DNA of 39,442 nucleotides. Source: Octopus bimaculoides. Lineage: Eukaryota. The DNA lies in assembly GCF_001194135.2 (NCBI RefSeq), contig NC_069002.1, forward strand, positions 13,143,637-13,183,078, written 5' to 3'. Shown one piece after another: positions 1,863 through 38,738 of this stretch (within the stretch, counting starts at the first letter, position 1; each line of letters begins with the position of its first letter). A model generated the notes under the pieces. That model had not been told where the DNA came from. It searched no databases and worked only from the letters and a program-made list of their open reading frames with translations. A program made the translations under genes and the position numbers.

Positions 1863-2293
1863 CAAGGATGGTGGATTGGCAAAATTATTATTTTAGTGGT
1901 GATATTGTTGTTTGTGTTGTATTGTTTGCCTGTTTTATTTTGTATCCCCTTTGATATTGGAATCAATGAGTCTTTGTGCTTCTTGCCGCTATGTGTGAAG
2001 TGCTGTACATGGTGTGGAATCGTATGCCATAACTAGGAATATAACACTTGACAATATAAAAGTATGACTGTCCAATTTCTCTTTTAGACTTTGCTTTTTT
2101 TTCTCTCACTTATGTACAACTAACCGATAATGTGTACACACAGACACACACACATAAAAGCAAAGTAGCTTGTTAGAAAATCTCTACCAAACAGCCATGT
2201 TGAAGTGGCAATTAACATTACTTCTCTCTTTCTCTCTTCCTCCCTTTCACTCTCCTTCTCTCTACATTTTGTGTGTGTATGTGTGTGTATGTA

Positions 2294-2696
2294 GGCGCAG
2301 GAGTGGCTGTGTGGTAAGTAGCTTGCTTACCAACCACATGGTTCCGGGTTCAGTCCCACTGCGTGGCACCTTGGGCAGGTGTCTTCTACTATAGCCTCGG
2401 GCTGACCAATGCCTTGTGAGTGGATTTGGTAGACGGAAACTGAAAGAAGCCCGTTGTATATATATATATAAACATATATATATATACATGTTTGTGTGTC
2501 TGTGTTTGTCCCCCCACCATCGCATGACAACCGATGCTGGTGTGTTTACGTCCCCGTAACTTAGTGGTTTGGCAAAAAGAGACCAATAAAATAAGTACTA
2601 GGCTTACAAAGAAGAAGTCCTGGGGTCGATTTGCTCAACTATAGAGGGTGCTCCAGCATGGCTGCAGTCAAATGACTGAAACAAGTAAAAGAGTAA
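2294..2696 (+). mobile_element. SINE family A, full length
   Basis: Runs from GGCGCAGGAGTGGCTGTGTGGTAAG through the B-box-like GGTTCAGTCC and (TA)n to AACAAGTAAAAGAGTAA. Confidence 0.92.
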
Positions 2697-2925
2697 ATAT
2701 ATACATATATTTATTTTATTTAATAAACACAATATATATTTGTATGAGCTATTAGTTTCATGTGATGAAAACAGCTCAGAGAGCATGGATACAGCCTGAG
2801 GATTGCAAGCATGAAGGCACCAGACGTTAAAAAATGCTGTCTACATCCCCATACCAGTGGCATGTAAAAAGCAAGCTCTCGTAAACATATAATAATTCTA
2901 GTGAAATGCATTCACTGATTTAACT

Positions 2926-3148
2926 GCTTGACAGGCATCTCCAACTAGCAGGCCATTGCTATTCCAGACTAATGACGAGCAAAGACTCAGAAACATGTCT
3001 CTGGATGCAGGCTTCGCTGGGTGGAGGTACTCGTCTCCCCTTTGTAAACATGAGGACACAGGAAATGTGTCAAGGCTGACAGGAAGCAGTGCAGTTTCCT
3101 AGGGCTAAATAGCAGTAGTATTATTCCCTTCATGGGACTGTCACATTA
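2926..3148 (+). ncRNA. Retrozyme-like unit 1 with degenerate type I hammerhead (fold 2963-3005; G5A)
   Basis: Reads TCCAGA-CTAATGA-C-GAGcaaagaCTC-A-GAAA-CATG-TC-TCTGGA: 6-bp stem I, palindromic ACATGT stem III, GUC site ending at 2999. Stem I extends to GACAGGCATCTCCA (2930-2943) pairing with 3022-3035. Confidence 0.7.
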
Positions 3149-3277
3149 AGTTGACAGTATACAACTACTTTATCGCATCACTACTGCTTAAATCTCTCTG
3201 AGAAATTTAGAAATGTATTATTTCTATTTTTGAAATCAGTGAATGTGTTTCACTAGAATTATTATATGTTTATGAAA

Positions 3278-3502
3278 GCTTGACAGGTATATCTCCAACT
3301 AGCAGGCCATTGCTACTTCAGACTGATAACGAGCAAAGATTCAGAAACATGTCTCTGGATGCAGGCTTAGCTGGGTGGAGATGCTTGTCTCTCCCTTGTA
3401 AACATAAGGACACAGGAAATGTGTCAAGGCCGACAGGAAGCGGTGCAACTTCCTAGGTCTAATCAACAGTAGTATTATTCTCTTCATGGAACTGTCACAT
3501 TA
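3278..3502 (+). ncRNA. Retrozyme-like unit 2 with degenerate type I hammerhead (fold 3317-3359; G8A)
   Basis: Reads TTCAGA-CTGATAA-C-GAGcaaagaTTC-A-GAAA-CATG-TC-TCTGGA. Direct repeat of unit 1. The stem I and II differences become G-U wobbles. GUC site ends at 3353. Confidence 0.7.
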
Positions 3503-5511: not shown

Positions 5512-6149
5512 TCAACCCTTTAGTGTTTAGATTACTGCATGAAAAGGAATAATATTTATCTGTTCACATTACTTTGAATTAATCATGCATATCTTGTAGC
5601 TTTAAGTTTTTGATGAAATGATTACTCTTTACTCTTTTACTCTATTACTTGTTTCAGTCATTTGACTGCGGCCATGCTGGAGCATCGCCTTTAGTCGAGC
5701 AAATCGACCCTAGGACTTATTCTATCGGTCTCTTTTGCCGAACCGCTAAGTTACGGGGACGTAAACACACCAGCATCGGTTGTCAAGTGATGTTGAGGGG
5801 ACAAACACAGACACACAAACATATACACACACATACATACATATATATATATATATATACATATATACGACAGGCTTCTTTTAGTTTCCGTCTACCAAAT
5901 CCACTCACAAGGCTTTGGTCGGCCCAAGGCTGTAGTAGAAGACACTTGCCCAAGCTACCACGCAGTGGGACTGAACCCAGAACCATGTGGTTGGTAAGCA
6001 AGCTACTTACCACACAGCCCCTCCTGCGCCTATGATTCTTTATTTTTTAAAACAACATTGTAGAGTAGGTGTATGAGGCTGGGTCTCGCCAATTTGAACA
6101 CAAAACAATATTTGGATGGATATGGCTGATGTAAATGTTAAAGTGTTAA
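5512..6149 (+). mobile_element. TTAA-CCC MITE interrupted by SINE A
   Basis: TCAACCCTTTAGTGTTT...AAATGTTAAAGTGTTAA; internal homology to the other copies. Confidence 0.7.
5624..6030 (-). mobile_element. SINE family A, full length, nested in a TTAA MITE
   Basis: Flanked by the ATGATT direct repeat (5618-5623 and 6032-6037). 22-nt deletion between ACTTATTCT repeats near 5723. Confidence 0.92.
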
Positions 6150-6668: not shown

Positions 6669-6906
6669 GCCACAGATCTTCCATGTTCAATGTTTGCATC
6701 TTGTTATCCTGTTGACATTACAAACTATCATGTTTCCATGCAGGATAGGGTGGAGGAGAGACTGTTGCTAAGTGAACTAACGATTCTCTTGTCTCCTTCC
6801 ACCCTCTTCTTTTTTTCTTTTTACTAAAGGGGAGCCAAGAAGCCGATAAGGTGACGTGCAGCTAAATCTACCTCAAAACGTACATGTTTCTGCCTTAAAT
6901 AAAGAT

Positions 6907-7034
6907 GGATGTTGTAATCTTTGGATGTTGTAATCTTTGGATGTTGTAATCTTTGGATGTTGTAATGTTTGGATGTTGTAATCTTTGGATGTTGTAATGT
7001 TTGGATGTTGTAATGTTTGGATGTTGTAATCTTT
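6907..7034. repeat. Minisatellite, 8 x 16 bp (GGATGTTGTAATSTTT)
   Basis: Eight contiguous units differing only by C/G at one position (order C,C,C,G,C,G,G,C). Confidence 0.95.
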
Positions 7035-7361
7035 GACATACGGAGATGAAATGCTTTTTAATTATAAGTCCTTTCAATTAGGGTTGAGCTGGGAGTAAAT
7101 AACATCTTGGTCAACTTCAGTATTTTATTTTGAAGTCCGGTACTTATGAATCCTTATCTTATGGGACATAAGCAATGACATTTTTGCATACTTTCCGTCT
7201 AATTTCACTCGAAAGGCATTTCTTAAGCATAAGACTGAGAAGATGCTTACCCAAGGTGCCGTGGAGTGGATCAAACTTGAGATCTCCTGGTTGTGAAGTG
7301 AAGTCTTTAACTGCAGAATGTTTTCTACGTTTCTATATTTATCAAGTGTAACAAGAACAAT

Positions 7362-8847: not shown

Positions 8848-9420
8848 TTAAAATTTCCTGAAAACCGTTTTATTCCTGCTTTCTGCGATGCAAAGAGTAA
8901 CTAACTGGGATTAAGGACAGAGACCCACAATGTGTACAAGATGTCTTGGCACAGCTGTTTTGGTGCTGCTTGTTCAGCACCACAGATTTCATGCTGACTT
9001 ATTTGACATCAGACGTTATAATGTCTTTGTTCTCTTTCTCCCCTCCCCAATCTCTCCCCATCCCCTTCGCCCCCCCCTCTGTGTGAACATGTTTCTATTT
9101 ATGTGTCTGAGAAGAGGGAAAGTGTTATTATGTCAAGTGTGTTTATGTAATACATTGTAATATCTCTCACTATCTCTGTATATATTTCTGCATGTGTGTG
9201 CGTGTGTGATTTTTGTCCCCATAGAGTCATAAGGTACAGTCACCAAAACACACTGCGTGTCTAGTCAGCCGTGAAAAGTTGTCTCATTTTCACCTGCAAT
9301 ATATAACCACGACAAGTACAAGTACGATATAAACTTGCATGTTCTGGCCTCTCACACCTACCTTACAATGTCATTATAAAAATAAACAATCGCATGATCA
9401 GAATTCTGAAGTGACAAGAT

Positions 9421-9712
9421 TCATCATCATCATCATCATTTAACGTCCTCTTTCCATGCTAGCATGGGTTGGACGATTTGACTGGGGACTGGTGAAACCA
9501 GATGGCAACACCAGGCTCCAATCTGATTTGGCAGAGTTTCTACAGCTGGATGCCCTTCCTAACGTCAACCACTCAGAGAGTGTAGTGGGTGCTTTTACGT
9601 GCCACCCGCACGAAGGCCAGTCAGGCGGTACTGGCAACGGCCACGCTCAAATGGTGTATTTTATGTGCCACCCGCACAAGAGCCAGTCCAGGGGCACTGG
9701 CAACGATCTCGC
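9421..9712 (-). mobile_element. RTE-type 3' end, young subfamily
   Basis: Reverse complement of 21770-22060 with high identity. Confidence 0.9.
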
Positions 9713-10504: not shown

Positions 10505-11047
10505 AAACTGTTGAGGGAACTTGTGGTAGAGGTAGACCCAGGAAGACATGGGACAAGGTGGGGAAGCATGATCTTCAAACTGTGGTCTCAGAGAGACCTT
10601 TGGCGATATGCTGCGCTTGAGAAGACCTGTCAAGCCAAGTGAAATCGTAGTTGTGGCTGATGCTGGTACCACATAACTGGCACCTATGCTGGTAGCATGT
10701 AAAATGACCTTTCAAGCATTGGGTTTCACGGAAGCCAAGTAGCTGAGCTCCTTTCAAGTGTTGGGCCTCACGGAGGCAATGTTCAAGACCTTTGGCATTA
10801 TGTCATGCTTGAGAAGACCCATCAAGCCAAGTAAAATCGCAATCGTGGCAGGTACTGATGTCATGCAAAAGGCACGTAAAAGCACCCATTATGCTTTCGG
10901 AGTGGTTGGTGTTAGGAAGGGCATCCAGCCGTAGAAACCATGCCAAATGAGACTGGAGTCTGGTGCAGCCTTCCAGCTTGCCAGCCCTGGTCAAACTGTC
11001 CAACCCATGCCAGCATGGACAACGGATGTTAAATGATGATGATGATG
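10505..11047 (+). mobile_element. RTE-clade LINE 3' fragment: decayed ORF C-terminus plus 3' UTR and (GAT)n tail
   Basis: Translates TVEGTCGRGRPRKTWDKVGKHDLQT, frameshift, RDLWRYAALEKTCQAK*. RGRPxxxW...DR..WR is the typical RTE ORF end. This ties the abundant GGAAGGGCATCCAGC..(GAT)n repeats to an RTE partner. Confidence 0.8.
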
Positions 11048-11148
11048 AACATAATGATGGGCAAAATACCATTAAACATTTTGCCTGGTGTAGTAACAAT
11101 TTTGCCAGCTCGCTGCCTTAAGAAATAAAAAAAAGAATAATAATAATA

Positions 11149-11322
11149 GGCGCAGGAGTGGCTGTGTGGTAAGTAGCTTGCTTACCAACCACATGGTTCC
11201 GGGCTCAGTCCCACTGCGTGGCATCTTGGGCAAGTGTCTTCTACTATAGCCTCGGGCCGACCAAAGCCTTGTGAGTGGATTTGGTAGACGGAAAACTGAA
11301 AGAAGTCCGTCGTATATGTATG

Positions 11323-11389
<67 letters not shown>

Positions 11390-11593
11390 TTGTATGTCTG
11401 TGTTTGTCCCCCCACCATCGCTTGACAACCGATGCTTGTGTGTTTACGTCCCCGTAACTTAGTAGTTCGGCACAAGAGACCAACAGAATAAGTACTAGGC
11501 TTACAAAGAATAAGTCCTGGGGTCGATTTGCTCGACTAAAGGTGGTGCTCCAGCATGGCCACAGTCAAATGACTGAAACAAGTAAAAGAGTAA
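11149..11593 (+). mobile_element. SINE family A, full length
   Basis: Head, long internal (TA)n and tail ending GTAAAAGAGTAA. Confidence 0.92.
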
Positions 11594-12737: not shown

Positions 12738-13025
12738 ATGGTGGTGGTGGTGGTAATAGTTGTTGTAGTAGTAGTAGTAGTGGTGGTGGTGGTTGTAGTA
12801 GTAGTAGTAGTGGTGGTGGTGGTTGTAGTAGTAGTAGTAGTGGTGGTGGTGGTGGTTGTAGTAGTAGTAGTAATAGTGGTGGTTGTAGTAGTAGTGGTAG
12901 TGGTGGTGGTTGTAGTAGTAGTAGTAGTGGTGGTGGTTGTAGTAGTAGTAGTGGTGGTGGTTGTAGTAGTAGTGGTGGTGGTTGTAGTAGTAGTGGTAGT
13001 GGTGGTTGTAGTAGTAGTAATAGTG
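12738..13025. repeat. Compound trinucleotide microsatellite (GGT)n-TGT-(AGT)n with higher-order repetition
   Basis: Directly visible; the source of the poly-T/V/S/G pseudo-ORFs. Confidence 0.95.
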
Positions 13026-13910
13026 GTGGCGGTGATGGTGAGGAATAAGATGGAATTTGTAAGAGGAGACGGGGGTGTTTNNNNNNNNNNNNNNNNNNNN
13101 NNNNNNNNNNNNNNNNNNNNNNNNNNNNNNNNNNNNNNNNNNNNNNNNNNNNNNNNNNNNNNNNNNNNNNNNNNNNNNNNNNNNNNNNNNNNNNNNNNNN
13201 NNNNNNNNNNNNNNNNNNNNNNNNNNNNNNNNNNNNNNNNTGTTATTGCCTTGTCAGGGTGTGGAGTGGGGCTGTGGTAGGGGTGGGATAAAAAAAAAAG
13301 AAAAGCAAGGTCAGTAGGTAATGGTTGAAATTGAACTTGGCTCATAAAGGGATTTAAGTAAAACCTGGCAATGTGTTTTGTCCACTTCTGCTGCTATTTC
13401 ACTGCCAGCCCCCTACCCAGGGCCTTCAGTTCTGATGATGATGATGATGATAGAAATAAACAAGATATTTGATTCTTGTATGCTAGGAAAAGCAGTAATA
13501 ATTGCAACAAGAATATGAAGAGTAGGAAAAGATAAAAAGAAATGGAAGACCCTTGCCCTACCAACGAAAAAAAAAAAAAAATACATGATAATCAGACACT
13601 TTTACATTACTGCAGCTTTCTTCTATCTTCTGTTACAATCCATTTTGTCACTTCAGGCCATGGGGAGCTCAGAACAGAAGCCTTGAAGAAACATACACAA
13701 CTCTCTCTCTCTCCTTACCTCTGTTTATGTACCTCTCTCTCTCTCTCTTTGTTGCTGCGTCACTCTGTCTATTTGTCTCTCTGTCTCTCACTCTGCTGTC
13801 ACTCACGTATTCACACTGATACACATACTGCTATCATCTAGTGTGCTAAAAATAACAGCTATATCCAGCTATTAAAATTATAAATCTAAAGATAAATTTT
13901 GATTAATTCA

Positions 13911-17479: not shown

Positions 17480-17812
17480 ACATTTGAAATCGGGATGGCA
17501 CCTGTGCCCAGCGTCGCCTTTCTGGCACTTGTGCCCGTGGCATATGTAAGGACATTCGAGAGAGATCGTTGCCAGTACCCCTAGACTGACTCTTGTGCGG
17601 GTGGCACATAAAATACACCATTTTGAGCGTGGCTGTTGCCAGTATCGCCTGACTGGCCTTTGTGCCGGTGGCACGTAAAAGCACCTACTACACTCTCTGA
17701 GTGGTTGGCGTTAGGAAGGGCATCCAGCTGTAGAAACTCTGCCAAATCAGATTGGAGCCTGGTGTAGCCTTCGGGTTCCACCAGTCCTCAGTCAAATCGT
17801 CCAACCCATGCT
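17480..17812 (+). mobile_element. RTE-type 3' region, young subfamily, running into the gap
   Basis: GTTGCCAGTA...GGTGGCAC(A/G)TAAAA repeat units, then GGTTGGCGTTAGGAAGGGCATCC. Confidence 0.88.
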
Positions 17813-18438: not shown

Positions 18439-18605
18439 CTGGTGTGTTTACGTCCCCGTAACTTAGCGGTTCGGCACAAGAGACCGATAGAATAAGTACT
18501 AGGCTTACAAAGAATAAGTCCTGGGGTCGATTTGCTTGACTAAAGGCGGTGCTCCAGCATGGCCACAGTCAAATGACTGAAACAAGTAAAAGAGTAAAAG
18601 AGTAA
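18439..18605 (+). mobile_element. SINE family A 3' half (5' part lost in the N-gap)
   Basis: Matches the tail of the 11149 copy and ends (GTAAAAGA)2GTAA. Confidence 0.9.
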
Positions 18606-18752
18606 CTGTTCCCCCGAGTGTTTTGTGATTTGTCCTCATAATGCCATTCCAACTTCTTGTTTGTTGCCTTTCCAGTAATAAAAGAAATATTCTATTAATG
18701 TCATTATTCAAGAATTGCTTTTATTGTTTTCCTTTTTTTTTCTTCTCATCAG

Positions 18753-19257: not shown

Positions 19258-19441
19258 TGTTGGCACTCCGTCGCTTACGACGTCGAGGGTTCCAGTCGAT
19301 CCAATCAGCGGTACAGCCTGCTCGTGAAATTAACGTGCAAGTGGCTGAGCACTCCACAGACACGTGTACCCTTAACGTAGTTCTCAGGGATATTCAGCGT
19401 GACACAGTGTGACAAGGCTGGCCCCTTTGAAATACAGGTAC
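19258..19441 (-). mobile_element. SINE family B 3' part (remainder in the gap)
   Basis: TTGGCACTCCGTCGCTTACGACGTCGAGGGTTCCAG is the reverse complement of the B tail. Confidence 0.9.
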
Positions 19442-20768: not shown

Positions 20769-21144
20769 TGGAGGCGCAATGGCCCAGTGGTTAGGGCAGC
20801 AGACTCGCAGTCATAGGATTGCGGTTTCGATTGCCAGACTGGGCGTTGTGGGTGTTTATTGAGCGAAAACACTTAAAGCTCCACGAGGCTCCGGCAGGGG
20901 ATGGTGGCAAACCCTGCTGTACTCTTTCACCACAACTTTCTCTCACTCTTACTTCCTGTTTCTATTGTACCTGTATTTCAAAGGGCCAGCCTTGTCACAC
21001 TGTGTCACGCTGAATATCCCCAAGAACTATGTTAAGGGTACACATGTCTGTGGAGTGCTCAGCCACTTGCATGTTAATTTCATGAGTAGGCTGTTCCGTT
21101 GATCAACTGGAACCCTCGACGTCATAAGCGACGGAGTGCCAACA
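20769..21144 (+). mobile_element. SINE family B, full length
   Basis: A box TGGCCCAGTGG and B box GGTTTCGATTGCC. Flanked by ATGTGTGTGTGT on both sides, a probable TSD. Confidence 0.92.
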
Positions 21145-21589: not shown

Positions 21590-22060
21590 GCCAGCACCCT
21601 TGTTGGTGTCGTGTATAAAGCACCCAGCACACTCTGTGAAGTGGTTTGGCATTAAGAAGTGCTCCCAGCTGTTGTAACCATGTGAAAACAATTGGAGCTT
21701 AGTGCAGCTCTCCAGCTTGACAGCTACTGTCAAAGTGTCCAACCCATGCCAGCATGGAAAACAGATGCTGAGATCGTTGCCAGTGCCCCTGGGCTGGCTC
21801 TTGTGTGGGTGGCACATAAAATACACCATTTTGAGTGTGGCTGTTGCCAGTACCGCCTGACTGGCCTTCGTGTGGGTGACATGTAAAAGCACCCACTACA
21901 CTCTTGGAGTGGTTGGCGTTAGGAAGGGCATCCAGCTGTAGAAACTCTGCCAAATCAGATTGGAGCCTGGTGTTGCCATCCGGTTTCACCAGTCCTCAGT
22001 CAAATCGTCCAACCCATGCTAGCATGGAAAGCGGACGTTAAACGATGATGATGATGATGA
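21590..22060 (+). mobile_element. Two RTE-type 3' ends in tandem (older 21590-21769, younger 21770-22060)
   Basis: The older copy stops at GCATGGAAAACAGATGCT and the younger copy starts immediately. Ends in (GAT)n. Confidence 0.88.
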
Positions 22061-22734
22061 CATGAAGTAGTGTTGAATAAAATGTATTCATTTTAAAGTT
22101 GTATTTAATGTTTGAGTGTATTTGAATTATTTTGTGTCTATCAAGCTGTGAACATCAGATTTGGTGTCCATTGCTGACAAAGTGAAAAAATGTAGAAAGA
22201 ACATGCATCCGACATCAAATGAGAAATTTCAAAGCCATAAATGTGTTTTCACACATGTTAAAGAGGAGAATTTTCTCTTGGGATATCTGCAAAGGAAGGT
22301 CTTCTTGTACTTCAATACATTCAATTGTTAAATATGACTGAATAGTTTTTATTCTCTGCTGCTTTGCATAACATTATTTATTTAATTCTAGTTTGACCAA
22401 GCCTTATGCATATCAGCAAACATATTGTTTTAGTAAGAATAATTTTGTTCTTATCAGGCTGTGGATGACATTTGGTATTCGTTGCTGACAAATTGTAAAG
22501 ATGCAAAAATGCTTGTGTCCAATGATCCAATGATGCTGTTCACAGCCCAAGATGTATTTCTACACGTGTCTAGGAGGAAAACTTTCCTCTGGGAATATTT
22601 CCACAACAGCAGGTCTTCTCACACAAGGACTGTCCAAAGCCTTGTGAGTGGATTTGGTAGATGGAAATCCATCATATTTGTGTCTTCCTGTCTTGACATT
22701 GTGTGATTGTTATGAATGAATGCTATTCATTTCC

Positions 22735-23237: not shown

Positions 23238-23855
23238 CATCATCATCATCATTTAATGACCATTCTCCATATTGGCATGGGTTGGACAGTTTAACTGGAA
23301 CCAATAAACCATAGTATTGTGCCAGGCTCCAATGTCAGCTTTGGCATGGTTTCTATGGTTGGAGGCTCCTCTTGATACCAACAACTTTACAAGGCATCCA
23401 GGGGGTGATCTTACGGAACGAGTCCTTAATATCGGCCTTTTCCGTAAAAAGTGTCTTCGGCGATCTTTACCAAACATCGGCCTTTTCTGTAAAAAGTGTT
23501 GGAGTGAAACAGGGAAATGACATCATAAAAGCGAAAGACATACAGAGAGCGCGATTTATTTTGAAGGGGTTAGGGTTTGGATTTTAGGGTTTGTGTTAGG
23601 GAATTCCGTCCCTAACCGTAGCCCTAACACTAACCCTAACCCTAAAACCCTAACCCTGACACTAAAACCCTAACCCTAACACCATAGTGAAGATCCTGCA
23701 GGTATTACGGAAAAGGCCAATGTTTGGTAAAGATCGCCGAAGACACTTTTTACAGAAAAGGCTGATATTTAGGACTCGTACTGTAAGATCGCCCATGCAG
23801 GGTGCTCTTTAAGTGGCACCAGCACCAGTGAGATTACCAGGTAACTCGCAAAACA
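23238..23855 (-). mobile_element. RTE-type 3' end split by the foldback element at 23403-23794
   Basis: (CAT)n tail and GGCATGGGTTGGACAG lie left of the insertion; GGGTGCTCTTT..GTGGCACCAGCAC resumes to its right. Confidence 0.7.
23403..23794. mobile_element. Foldback/MITE-type DNA element with ~90-bp TIRs and internal telomere-like repeats
   Basis: TIRs at 23403-23492 and 23705-23794. Flanks ATCCAGG (23396-23402) and ATGCAGG (23795-23801) form a 6/7 direct repeat. TTAGGG-like tract 23566-23601 faces CCCTAA-like tract 23610-23680. Confidence 0.85.
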
Positions 23856-27877: not shown

Positions 27878-28250
27878 TGGCTGTGTGGTAAGAAGTTTGC
27901 TTCCCAACCCTATGGTTTCAGGTTCAGTCCCACTGTGTGGCACCTTGGTCAAGTTTCTTCTATTGCCCCAGACCAACCAAAGCCTTTGGAGTGGGTTTCA
28001 TAGAGGGAAAATGAAAGAAACCCATCATGTGCATGTATATATATATATTGCCGGACTGGCCCTCGTGCCGGTGGCACGTAAAAAGCACCCACTACACTCT
28101 TGGAGTGGTTGGCGTTAGGAAGGGCATCCAGCTGTAGAAACTCTGCCAGATCAAATTGGAGTCTGGTGTAGCCATCTGGTTTGCCAGTCTCCAGTCAAAT
28201 CGTCCAACCCATGCTAGCATGGAAAACGGACGTTAAATGATGATGATGAT
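27878..28250 (+). mobile_element. Chimeric retroposon: family A head + (TA)n + RTE-type 3' tail
   Basis: A head 27878-~28028, microsatellite, then GGACTGGCCCTCGTGCCGGTGGCACGTAAAAAGCACCC...(GAT)n. Confidence 0.8.
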
Positions 28251-28261
28251 GATATATATAT

Positions 28262-30879: not shown

Positions 30880-31268
30880 TGGAGACACAATGGCCCAGTG
30901 GTTAGGGCAGCGGACTTGCAGTCATAGGATCACGGTTTCGATTCCCAGACCGGGCGTTGTGAGTGTTTATTGAGCGAAAACACCTAAAGCTGCAGGAGGC
31001 TCCGGCAGGGGATGGTGGCGAACCCTGCTGTACTCTTTCACCCACAACTTTCTCTCACTCTTACTACCTGTTTCTGTTGTGCCTGTAATTCAAAGGGTCA
31101 ACCTTGTCACACTGTGTCACGCTGAATATCCCCGAGAACTACGTTAAGGGTACACGTGTCTGTGGAGTGCTCAGCCACTTGCACATTAATTTCACGAGCA
31201 GGCTGTTCCGTTGATCGGATCAACTGGAACCCTCGACGTTGTAAGCGACGGAGTGCCAACAACAACAA
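30880..31268 (+). mobile_element. SINE family B, full length with (AAC)n tail and TSD
   Basis: ACCTGGCTACC direct repeat at 30866-30876 and 31268-31278. Confidence 0.95.
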
Positions 31269-38348: not shown

Positions 38349-38738
38349 TGGAGGTGCAATGGCCCAGTGGTTAGGGGAGCGGACTCGCGGTCATAGGATC
38401 GCGGTTTCGATTCCCAGACCAGGCATTGTGAGTGTTTATTGAGCGAAAACACCTAAAGCTCCATGAGGCTCCGGCAGGGGATGGTGGTGAACCCTGCTGT
38501 ACTCTTCCACCACAACTTTCTCTCACTCTTACTTCCTGTTTCTGTTGTGCCTGTAATTCAAAGGGTCAGCCTTGTCACACTGTGTCACGCTGAATATCCC
38601 CAAGAACTACGTTAAGGGTACACGTGTCTGTGGAGTGCTCAGCCACTTGCACGTTAATTTCACGAGCAGACTGTTCCGTTGATCAGATCAACTGGAACCC
38701 TTGACGTCGTAAGCGACGGAGTGCCAACAACAACAACA
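38349..38738 (+). mobile_element. SINE family B, full length with (AAC)n tail
   Basis: High identity to the 30880 copy. Confidence 0.93.

What the first reader, a model, noticed from the sequence alone, without database searches (positions are those of the whole stretch)
2926..3502. Tandem hammerhead units with a 354-nt period: a retrozyme/circRNA-like system
Seen: two ~223-bp direct repeats with no consistent coding signal. Each folds into a long rod whose apex is a type I hammerhead: stem I TCCAGA/TCTGGA, core CT(A/G)AT(G/A)A, stem II GAG/CTC, GAAA, self-complementary ACATGT stem III and a GUC site (2999 and 3353). The repeat boundary nearly coincides with the base of the extended stem (GACAGGCATCTCCA pairing with TGGAGATGCTTGTC). 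Further hairpins follow (GACACA-ggaaa-TGTGTC; AGGAA/TTCCT). Differences in stems I and II are G-U-compatible. Established: minimal hammerheads with palindromic stem III work as dimers, and tandem ~170-400-nt hammerhead repeats in animals (retrozymes, Penelope-associated repeats) yield circular RNAs. Caveat: each copy has a different core mutation (G5A, G8A) and the base of stem II is a C-A mismatch, so this locus is probably a fossil. The two-copy consensus CTGATGA is intact, implying an active source family elsewhere.
Basis: partly seen in the sequence, partly recalled or inferred. Interest (0 to 1): 0.85.

Follow-up and report, generated by a model that had tools for sequence, protein, structure and literature searches.

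The report
Decayed hammerhead retrozyme insertion in octopus
This is a dead copy of a small non-coding mobile element carrying a self-cutting hammerhead RNA motif, sitting in repeat-rich octopus DNA; such elements are already known from other animals, so it is a modest addition and not a new kind of system.

Summary
Two direct copies (2926-3148 and 3278-3502, 89% identical, 352/354 nt apart) each carry a type I hammerhead-shaped motif (2963-3005, 3317-3359) at the tip of a long rod.

A covariance model built only from four published animal retrozyme hammerheads ranks these two sites first and second in the window (25.5 and 18.1 bits; next best 12). A relaxed descriptor matches nowhere else, and it matched 9 times in 4000 shuffled windows.

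Rfam's own hammerhead models do not reach E<=10. Each copy has one substitution at an essential core base (G5A, G8A). Both share a C.A mismatch at the base of helix II. The motif has diverged as fast as its surroundings, so the locus is a fossil.

The host is Octopus. The "223-bp repeat" is best read as 1.63 rounds of a 354-nt monomer, preceded by a 50-nt inverted piece (2872-2921) whose outer end matches the array's start. That suggests one retrotransposition of a multimeric or circular template.

An unrelated 25-kb Octopus bimaculoides locus holds another decayed hammerhead inside a 352-nt partial tandem.

Verdict: new member of a known kind (metazoan non-LTR retrozyme). I could not test for live copies or circular RNA.

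The parts
2872..2921 (-). 50-nt inverted piece: reverse complement of monomer segment 3233-3282. Its outer (left) end, CAAGC, is the same monomer coordinate as the first 5 nt of the direct array.
   Evidence: (I1, 92% complementary)
2922..2925 (.). 4-nt filler (AACT) between the inverted piece and the direct array
2926..3148 (+). Copy 1 of the repeated part of the monomer (223 nt), read as the 5'-truncated first round
2930..3040 (+). Long imperfect rod (extended helix I) with the hammerhead at its tip, copy 1
   Evidence: MFE -74.1 kcal/mol, z -2.65
2963..3005 (+). Hammerhead-like motif 1: helix I TCCAGA/TCTGGA, core CTAATGA (G5 to A), helix II CGAG/CTCA (C.A at the base), loop 2 CAAAGA, GAAA, helix III A-CATG-T, GTC ending at 2999
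   Evidence: (25.5 bits, E 2e-5, full-length match)
3000..3353 (+). 354-nt RNA that would be released by cleavage after C2999 and C3353 (predicted linear or circular monomer)
   Evidence: circular fold -101.2 kcal/mol, z -3.9, 62% paired; an inference from the motif, not shown
3055..3071 (+). Hairpin GACACA-GGAAA-TGTGTC (copy 2 equivalent is in the second unit)
3081..3100 (+). Hairpin AGGAAGC-AGTGCA-GTTTCCT
3149..3277 (+). Remainder of the monomer, present once (A+T-rich, G+C 0.26). Includes 3233-3282, the direct-orientation original of the inverted piece.
3278..3502 (+). Copy 2 of the repeated part (225 nt). With 3149-3277 it makes one full 354-nt round.
3317..3359 (+). Hammerhead-like motif 2: helix I TTCAGA/TCTGGA (one U.G), core CTGATAA (G8 to A), helix II CGAG/TTCA (C.A plus one G.U), CAAAGA, GAAA, A-CATG-T, GTC ending at 3353
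   Evidence: (18.1 bits, E 0.0035)

Best explanation
A single, old, now inactive insertion of a small non-coding retroelement that carries a canonical-architecture type I hammerhead ribozyme. It is an octopus member of the animal 'non-LTR retrozymes', elements thought to be mobilised by Penelope-like retrotransposons.

The monomer is about 354 nt. The locus holds 1.63 head-to-tail rounds of it (2926-3502), preceded by a 50-nt inverted piece (2872-2921).

How a live copy would work (inferred from published retrozymes, not shown here):
1. A transcript spanning two units folds so that the two palindromic ACAUGU segments pair and form a dimeric ribozyme.
2. Each site cuts after GUC, giving a 354-nt RNA with 5'-OH and 2',3'-cyclic phosphate ends.
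3. A host RtcB-type tRNA ligase closes it into a highly base-paired circle.
4. A retrotransposon reverse transcriptase copies the circle or multimer for more than one round, and the cDNA integrates as a partial tandem.

The outer end of the inverted piece and the start of the direct array fall on the same monomer coordinate, with a 5-nt duplication. That is the geometry of a 'twin-priming' 5' inversion, so all parts are most simply one integration event.

In this copy the ribozymes are predicted dead. The essential core bases G5 (copy 1) and G8 (copy 2) are each replaced by A. Both copies share a C.A mismatch where helix II normally starts with G-C.
For: Hammerhead identity:
- Model R1 was built from four published retrozyme hammerheads (coral, mussel, two axolotl), none from this window. 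It scores 2963-3005 at 25.5 bits and 3317-3359 at 18.1 bits as full-length matches. The next best hit in the window is 12 bits, and the best in 25 kb of unrelated control DNA is 10.6 bits.
- The descriptor's chance rate is about 0.002 per window.
- Architecture equals the published 'canonical' animal type: helix I 6 bp, helix II 4 positions, helix III 1-2 bp capped by a small palindromic loop. It shares GAAACATGTC and a six-base CAAA[A/G]A loop 2 with axolotl Ax330.

Retrozyme features:
- Monomer 354 nt, G+C 0.39. Published values are about 300 bp, under 45% G+C, occurring as dimers to multimers.
- Rod-like fold.
- No coding capacity and no protein relatives.

Single event: the direct copies (89%) and the inverted pair (92%) have similar divergence, and the breakpoints coincide. 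Partial tandems with an adjacent inverted truncated copy are described for Penelope-like elements.

Decay: 20 transitions, 3 transversions and one 2-nt indel. The motif diverges like the rest. The best basal stem is cross-copy (I2), so each copy has lost pairs that the ancestor had.

Host and family context:
- Repeat-derived peptides from the window match only Octopus bimaculoides proteins.
- A 25-kb O. bimaculoides locus fetched for unrelated reasons has another hammerhead-like motif (28.4 bits). It also sits at the tip of a rod and lies within a partial tandem of period 352.
Against: - Rfam hammerhead models give no match even at E<=10 on 71 nt.
- Tandem Repeats Finder does not report the array.
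- Only two copies exist, so there is no covariation test and no way to polarise the core substitutions. The intact ancestral core is an inference.
- The C.A at the base of helix II is shared, so even the source may have been a poor ribozyme.
- No other copy of this sequence family was found anywhere I could search.
- No target-site duplication could be recognised.
- No reverse-transcriptase or GIY-YIG coding remnant was found in the ten long ORFs scanned.
- E-values of model R1 are rough. One of its four training sequences has the same helix III as this motif.
- The twin-priming reading rests on one locus.
Confidence: 0.68

Rival explanations
1. These are the 3' ends (pseudo-LTRs) of heavily 5'-truncated autonomous Penelope-like elements in partial tandem, not a dedicated non-autonomous retrozyme.
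For: Penelope-like insertions are typically 5'-truncated partial tandems, often with an inverted truncated copy next to the upstream repeat, and carry hammerheads in the pseudo-LTRs. A 2026 preprint finds retrozymes and pseudo-LTRs to be close relatives. The octopus locus L005 also holds a minimal hammerhead-like motif next to a (TA)n tract.
Against: The published hammerheads of animal Penelope-like elements are the minimal type: helix II 6-8 bp, helix I 4-5 bp, no helix III. This one has the canonical 6 bp / 4 bp / 1 bp-plus-CAUG layout. The second round begins directly after the first with only 129 nt between the repeated parts, so the 'full-length' element would be 354 nt with no room for an ORF. 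No RT or endonuclease domain was found in the scanned ORFs.
Confidence: 0.12
2. The 223-bp unit is itself a discrete SINE-like hammerhead element (as Sm-alpha is in schistosomes) that inserted twice, independently, 131 bp apart.
For: Both copies start (GCTTGACAGG) and end (CTGTCACATTA) at the same points. The sequence between them has no significant similarity to the flanks.
Against: It needs two hits within 131 bp in the same orientation. It also needs a third coincidence: the inverted 50-nt piece ends exactly at the unit's first 5 nt. No target-site duplications flank either copy. No other copy of the unit exists in 64 kb of octopus DNA. No tRNA-like promoter part was found.
Confidence: 0.07
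3. The hammerhead likeness is accidental: the locus is a local duplication of a hairpin-forming repeat (for example a foldback or MITE-like element bounded by the 50-nt inverted repeats).
For: Rfam finds no hammerhead. Both cores deviate from consensus. The 50-nt inverted repeats bracket 2872-3282 like terminal inverted repeats.
Against: The chance rate of the relaxed descriptor is about 0.002 per window. The independent model separates the two sites from background by 6 to 13 bits. The two core deviations are at different positions, so each copy vouches for the other's consensus base. Copy 2 lies outside the inverted-repeat bracket.
Confidence: 0.05
4. The locus is still functional: the variant cores cleave in the dimer context, or the transcribed rod serves another role such as a small-RNA precursor.
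For: Natural retrozyme hammerheads tolerate a mismatch at the base of helix II: axolotl HHR_Amex2 has U.U and still cleaves. A U3-A8 core variant is known. The structures fold better than shuffles.
Against: G5 is needed for activity (established mutagenesis knowledge). In the full-length structure G8 pairs with C3 (my knowledge), and its 2'-OH is the proposed general acid. Copy 2 has A8 without the compensating U3. The motif shows no slower divergence than its flanks.
Confidence: 0.05

Closest known systems
Axolotl/newt retrozyme Rtz_331 with HHR_Amex1 (the classical 'satellite 2' hammerhead), Cervera & de la Pena 2020, PMC7229834
   Same: Type I topology. Helix III is one A-U pair capped by the palindromic CAUG loop (GAAACATGTC in both). 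Helix II has 4 positions with a six-base CAAA[A/G]A loop. Monomers are 330-350 nt, non-coding, rod-like, and expected to cleave as dimers.
   Different: No sequence similarity outside the ribozyme. Here helix II starts with C.A instead of G-C, and each copy has a core substitution. There are 1.63 rounds here instead of long arrays, and the host is a cephalopod.
Mussel (Mytilus galloprovincialis) retrozyme Mg353, same paper
   Same: Mollusc host, 353-nt monomer, type I hammerhead, low G+C, head-to-tail copies.
   Different: The mussel ribozyme has a longer palindromic helix III (CGCGCG) and an intact core. It has thousands of copies and circular RNA shown experimentally. None of that is shown here.
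Minimal hammerheads in pseudo-LTRs of Penelope-like elements, Cervera & de la Pena 2014 (PMC4209133); Craig et al. 2021 (PMC8557442)
   Same: Partial tandems, an adjacent inverted truncated copy, and a dimer-dependent ribozyme. These elements are the likely source of the reverse transcriptase.
   Different: Those ribozymes have a long helix II, a short helix I and no helix III, and they flank an RT-endonuclease ORF. Here the architecture is canonical and there is no ORF.
Twin-priming 5' inversions of L1 insertions (Ostertag & Kazazian 2001; recalled from memory, not checked with a tool)
   Same: An inverted upstream segment abuts a direct 3' segment. The outer end of the inverted part and the start of the direct part fall at the same template coordinate, with a few bases duplicated (here 5 nt).
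   Different: The retroelement class is different. Here the template would be a multimer or a circle read for more than one round. No poly(A) and no recognisable target-site duplication.
Rfam hammerhead families (Hammerhead_1 and its clan)
   Same: Same core and helix layout by eye.
   Different: No match at the gathering score or at E<=10.

Membership tests
Hammerhead ribozyme, type I | Conserved core 5' part CUGANGA | tested here: not met
   Copy 1 is CUAAUGA (G5 to A) and copy 2 is CUGAUAA (G8 to A). Each deviates at one essential base. Only the two-copy consensus is intact.
Hammerhead ribozyme, type I | GAAA, an A15.1-U16.1 pair and a cleavable UH triplet | tested here: met
   GAAA-CAUG-UC in both copies, with GUC ending at 2999 and 3353.
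Hammerhead ribozyme, type I | Three helices around the core, with helix I open | tested here: met
   Helix I has 6 bp (one U.G in copy 2). Helix II has 3 bp plus C.A at its base. Helix III is 1 bp plus a palindromic loop. Both are full-length matches to model R1, with only the C.A flagged as non-canonical.
Hammerhead ribozyme, type I | Score above Rfam's curated threshold for a hammerhead family | tested here: not met
   No hammerhead family is listed at gathering score or at E<=10 on 1 kb or 71 nt.
Hammerhead ribozyme, type I | Compensatory changes in the helices across relatives | not testable with these tools
   Only two copies exist. Both stem differences are C-to-U opposite G. No octopus genome is searchable here.
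Hammerhead ribozyme, type I | Self-cleavage | not testable with these tools
   Needs in vitro transcription.
Metazoan non-LTR retrozyme | Head-to-tail repeats of a 150-450 bp non-coding monomer with low G+C | tested here: inconclusive
   Period 352/354, G+C 0.39, no coding signal. But there are only 1.63 rounds, and Tandem Repeats Finder makes no call.
Metazoan non-LTR retrozyme | [quoted passage not shown] 2026) | tested here: not met
   Both units have a damaged core.
Metazoan non-LTR retrozyme | Canonical (not minimal) type I hammerhead at the tip of a highly paired monomer | tested here: met
   Architecture as.
Metazoan non-LTR retrozyme | Multi-copy family in the genome; circular RNA in the transcriptome | not testable with these tools
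   No further copy in the window, in L005, in metagenome or viral contigs, or in the protein collection. None of these collections holds an octopus genome or transcriptome as DNA.
Penelope-like element (pseudo-LTR) | RT plus GIY-YIG ORF between or beside the repeats | tested here: not met
   Only 129 nt lie between the repeated parts. The ten long window ORFs scanned have no RT or endonuclease domain. This was a limited scan, not all six frames.
Penelope-like element (pseudo-LTR) | Minimal hammerhead (long helix II, short helix I, no helix III) | tested here: not met
   Helix I 6 bp, helix II 4 positions, helix III present.

The most novel reading that the evidence does not exclude
The locus may preserve the integration scar of a retrozyme. 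It shows more than one round of a 354-nt circle or multimer copied into DNA, plus a twin-priming-type 5' inversion. That would be structural evidence that these circular-RNA elements integrate by target-primed reverse transcription.

Together with three hammerhead-like motifs in only 64 kb of octopus DNA, it also hints that cephalopod genomes are dense in hammerhead elements, which the paper library searched here does not mention for cephalopods. Some of these could still be live and produce abundant small circular RNAs.
Probability: 0.3. Interest if true: 0.55.

Novelty: new member of a known kind. Interest (0 to 1): 0.35.

Why it matters
Hammerhead-bearing retrozymes are a recently recognised source of abundant small circular RNAs in animals, and how they move is still hypothetical. 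This locus adds a cephalopod to their hosts.

If the same pattern recurs genome-wide, the partial-round-plus-inversion structure would give a testable footprint of the integration mechanism. By itself the locus is an inactive relic with no expected function.

Tried and rejected
- **Rfam scans** of the whole window at gathering score, of 1 kb at E<=10 and of 71 nt at E<=10: only chance snoRNA and lncRNA rows, no hammerhead. The same holds for the L005 site.
- **Looking for other family copies:**
  - BLAST of the unit against the window found nothing.
  - Translating the unit and searching 5.8 billion proteins found nothing, first with one frame, then with all long frames of both copies joined by X linkers.
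  - An exact 19-mer scan of metagenome contigs gave 4 hits, all chance, with no flanking similarity. The scan of viral contigs gave 0.
  - More octopus DNA through other repeat-containing proteins: not on record.
- **Is the spacer or the downstream flank a diverged further copy?** Local alignments were not better than shuffles (p about 0.08 at best). The TTGACAG right after copy 1 resembles the unit's start but is not significant.
- **Sequence relationship between the window unit and the L005 unit:** none beyond the ribozyme.
- **Coding reading:** one frame is open in both copies, but the changes are almost all amino-acid-changing and there are no homologues. Rejected.
- **tRNA-derived SINE head in the unit:** none.
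- **Protein domains in ten long window ORFs:** none relevant.
- **Target-site duplications around 2872 and 3502:** none convincing.

Full report
**1. What is in the sequence**

The window is repeat-rich, gene-poor eukaryotic DNA with nine runs of N.

At 2926-3502 there are two direct copies. U1 is 2926-3148 and U2 is 3278-3502. They are 89% identical with one 2-nt indel, and their starts are 352/354 nt apart. No other copy exists in the window.

Between them lie 129 nt (3149-3277) that occur once. A 50-nt segment overlapping the start of U2 (3233-3282) recurs in inverted orientation, at 92%, immediately left of U1 (2872-2921) (I1).

Tandem Repeats Finder reports nothing here.

**2. The hammerhead-like motif**

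Both copies read, 5' to 3':
- helix I strand TCCAGA (TTCAGA in U2)
- CTAATGA (CTGATAA in U2)
- CGAG, CAAAGA, CTCA (TTCA in U2)
- GAAA, CATG, TC
- then TCTGGA

This is the order of a type I hammerhead, with the cleavage site after C2999 and C3353.

I tested it in three ways.

*Relaxed descriptor.* It allowed at most one core mismatch and at most one helix II mismatch, and it required GAAA, a paired helix III, UH and a 6-bp helix I with G.U. It matches only these two sites in the window. It matched 9 times in 4000 block-shuffled windows, about 0.002 per window.

*Independent covariance model.* I built it from four hammerheads printed in the supplement of Cervera & de la Pena 2020: coral Amil224, mussel Mg353, axolotl Ax353 and Ax330. 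Searched with filters off:
- 2963-3005 scores 25.5 bits (E 2e-5).
- 3317-3359 scores 18.1 bits (E 0.0035).
- Both are end-to-end matches whose only non-canonical pair is the base of helix II.
- The third-best hit in the window is 12 bits.
- The best in 25 kb of unrelated control contigs is 10.6 bits.

The model's E-values are rough, and one training sequence shares this helix III.

*Rfam.* No hammerhead family is reported at the gathering score, at E<=10 on 1 kb or at E<=10 on 71 nt.

So the motif is hammerhead-shaped well beyond chance, but it falls below the curated family threshold.

**3. State of the ribozyme**

Copy 1 has A at core position 5 and copy 2 has A at position 8. G8's 2'-OH is the proposed general acid, and G12 is the general base. 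That G8 pairs with C3, and that G5 is intolerant of change, is established mutagenesis and structural knowledge recalled from memory, not checked here.

Both copies share C.A where helix II normally begins with G-C. A mismatch at that position is not unprecedented: axolotl HHR_Amex2 has U.U there and still cleaves weakly.

The 25 differing alignment columns between U1 and U2 are 20 transitions, 3 transversions and one 2-nt indel. The 43-nt motif differs at 0.093 per site, against 0.117 elsewhere. Nothing has protected the ribozyme since the copies separated.

The two stem differences (C2964T, C2986T) keep pairing only because any C-to-U opposite G does.

The best basal stem joins the 5' arm of U1 to the 3' arm of U2 (I2). 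That means each copy has lost pairs the ancestor had.

These are dead copies of a once better-structured element. That its core was intact follows only if each copy is taken as witness for the other.

**4. Architecture and likely origin**

U1 runs straight into 3149-3277, which runs into U2. The simplest reading is therefore a 354-nt monomer (3149-3502) preceded by the last 223 nt of another round, giving 1.63 rounds.

The inverted 50-mer covers monomer coordinates from 45 nt before the U start to 5 nt after it. Its outer end (CAAGC, 2872-2876) is the same coordinate as the first five bases of the direct array (GCTTG, 2926-2930). A 4-nt filler lies at the inner junction.

Two independent breakpoints would fall within about 5 nt of each other in a 354-nt unit only about 3% of the time (my estimate).

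This matches two known patterns:
- the geometry of twin-priming inversions of L1 (recalled from memory);
- the 'partial tandem with an inverted 5'-truncated copy adjacent' described for Penelope-like elements.

The similar divergence of the direct (89%) and inverted (92%) pairs fits one event.

I therefore infer a single retrotransposition from a multimeric or circular RNA copied for more than one round. [quoted passage not shown] I found no target-site duplication. This step is an inference from one locus.

**5. Predicted RNA**

Cleavage at both sites would release 3000-3353 (354 nt). Folded as a circle it gives -101.2 kcal/mol (z -3.9 against dinucleotide shuffles, 62% paired), closed by the long extended helix I.

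Flanking control windows mostly give z near 0. Windows rich in TA repeats reach similar z values, so this is supportive and not decisive.

**6. Host and relatives**

Peptides translated from the window's abundant repeats match only Octopus bimaculoides proteins. The window is therefore octopus DNA, either O. bimaculoides or a close relative.

The one octopus locus I could fetch is L005: 25 kb of chromosome CM046609.1 (assembly GCA_001194135.2), chosen through a repeat and not through this element. It shares the window's SINE families.

L005 contains another hammerhead-like motif at 2962-3008 (28.4 bits, E 1.7e-6):
- It reads GCGGCA-UUGAUAA-GUCA-AAACAA-UGAC-AAAA-CAUCAAUG-UC, then UGUCGC.
- It has the known U3-A8 core variant, but A in place of the general base G12.
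- It too sits at the tip of a long rod.
- It lies inside a partial tandem whose repeated part recurs at a spacing of 352 nt, about 1.3 rounds, ending at a SINE.
- Outside the ribozyme it shares no sequence with the window unit.

A third, minimal-type motif lies at L005 12070-12115, next to a (TA)n tract.

Three hammerhead-like motifs in 64 kb suggest that such elements are common in this genome. The sample is tiny, however, and one of the three loci was picked because of the motif.

**7. Comparison with known systems**

The published definition of animal non-LTR retrozymes is: canonical type I hammerheads in short head-to-tail repeats of about 170-450 bp, G+C under 45%, non-coding, from dimers to long arrays, expressed as highly paired circular RNAs, and co-occurring with Penelope-like elements.

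- Met here: monomer size (354 nt), G+C (0.39), non-coding nature, ribozyme architecture and rod shape.
- Not met: intact ribozymes in two consecutive units and a clean tandem call.
- Untested: copy number and circular RNA.

The ribozyme is closest in design to the amphibian HHR_Amex1, with the same GAAACAUGUC and the same loop 2 type. That ribozyme cleaves poorly as a monomer and much better in dimeric constructs. The monomer size matches mussel Mg353 and axolotl Ax353.

It is not the minimal hammerhead typical of animal Penelope-like elements.

In the paper library, 'hammerhead ribozyme' plus 'octopus' returned five papers, none reporting an octopus hammerhead element. The only relevant one concerns Naiad elements, which lack canonical hammerheads. 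In the retrozyme-plus-cephalopod search, none of the 15 top-ranked papers contained the word retrozyme.

**8. Verdict**

This is a real, non-chance, hammerhead-bearing retroelement relic: a new (cephalopod) member of a known kind, and inactive at this locus.

Three things need correcting:
- The repeat is 1.63 rounds plus an inverted piece, not a plain tandem.
- The G-U 'compatibility' carries no weight.
- Rfam does not recognise the motif.

Whether a live source family and circular RNAs exist in octopus remains open. It needs a genome-wide and transcriptome search that these tools could not run.

Noticed in passing
L005 2734-3207 (Octopus bimaculoides CM046609.1, about 80.98 Mb): A second, sequence-unrelated hammerhead-like motif (2962-3008, 28.4 bits; U3-A8 core variant, G12 replaced by A). 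It sits at the tip of a rod, inside a partial tandem with a 352-nt period that ends at a SINE.
   Followed up: partly
L005 12070-12115: A minimal hammerhead-like motif: GGCC-AUGACGA-AGGG-AAAUAG-CCCU-GAAAC-UCGA-GUC, then GCC. It has a 3-bp helix I and a palindromic helix III, and directly abuts a (TA)n tract. It resembles the 3' end of a truncated Penelope-like element. Score 13.3 bits, E 0.064.
   Followed up: partly
window 2289-2697 (+), 5629-6033 (-), 11145-11593, 18439-18606 and others: Many copies of a roughly 400-bp tRNA-derived SINE with an internal TA/TG microsatellite. They are 82-95% identical to copies in L005. Peptides from them are embedded in several Octopus bimaculoides gene models in UniProt, which suggests repeat sequence annotated as coding.
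   Followed up: partly
window 9419-9648, 17625-17811, 21842-22065, 28050-28254, 10760-11048: A second abundant repeat family of about 220 bp (one frame reads ...WHGLD.LT...LDALPNANHSES...), also present several times in L005.
   Followed up: no
window 23610-23683: An interstitial telomere-type repeat, (CCCTAA)n, about 11 units with interruptions.
   Followed up: no
window 6906-7035: A very regular 16-nt tandem repeat (TGGATGTTGTAATCTT), 8.1 copies at 96% matches.
   Followed up: no
window 12740-13039: A roughly 300-nt compound trinucleotide array, (GTA)n/(GGT)n with a 24-27-nt higher-order period. It abuts an assembly gap at 13081-13240.
   Followed up: no
window 19395-19414, 20993-21012, 31105-31124, 38573-38592: The same 10-nt motif doubled (TGTCACACTG or its complement) recurs at four places. 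It marks another dispersed repeat family (frames read ...SLVTLCHAE.P...), often next to assembly gaps.
   Followed up: no
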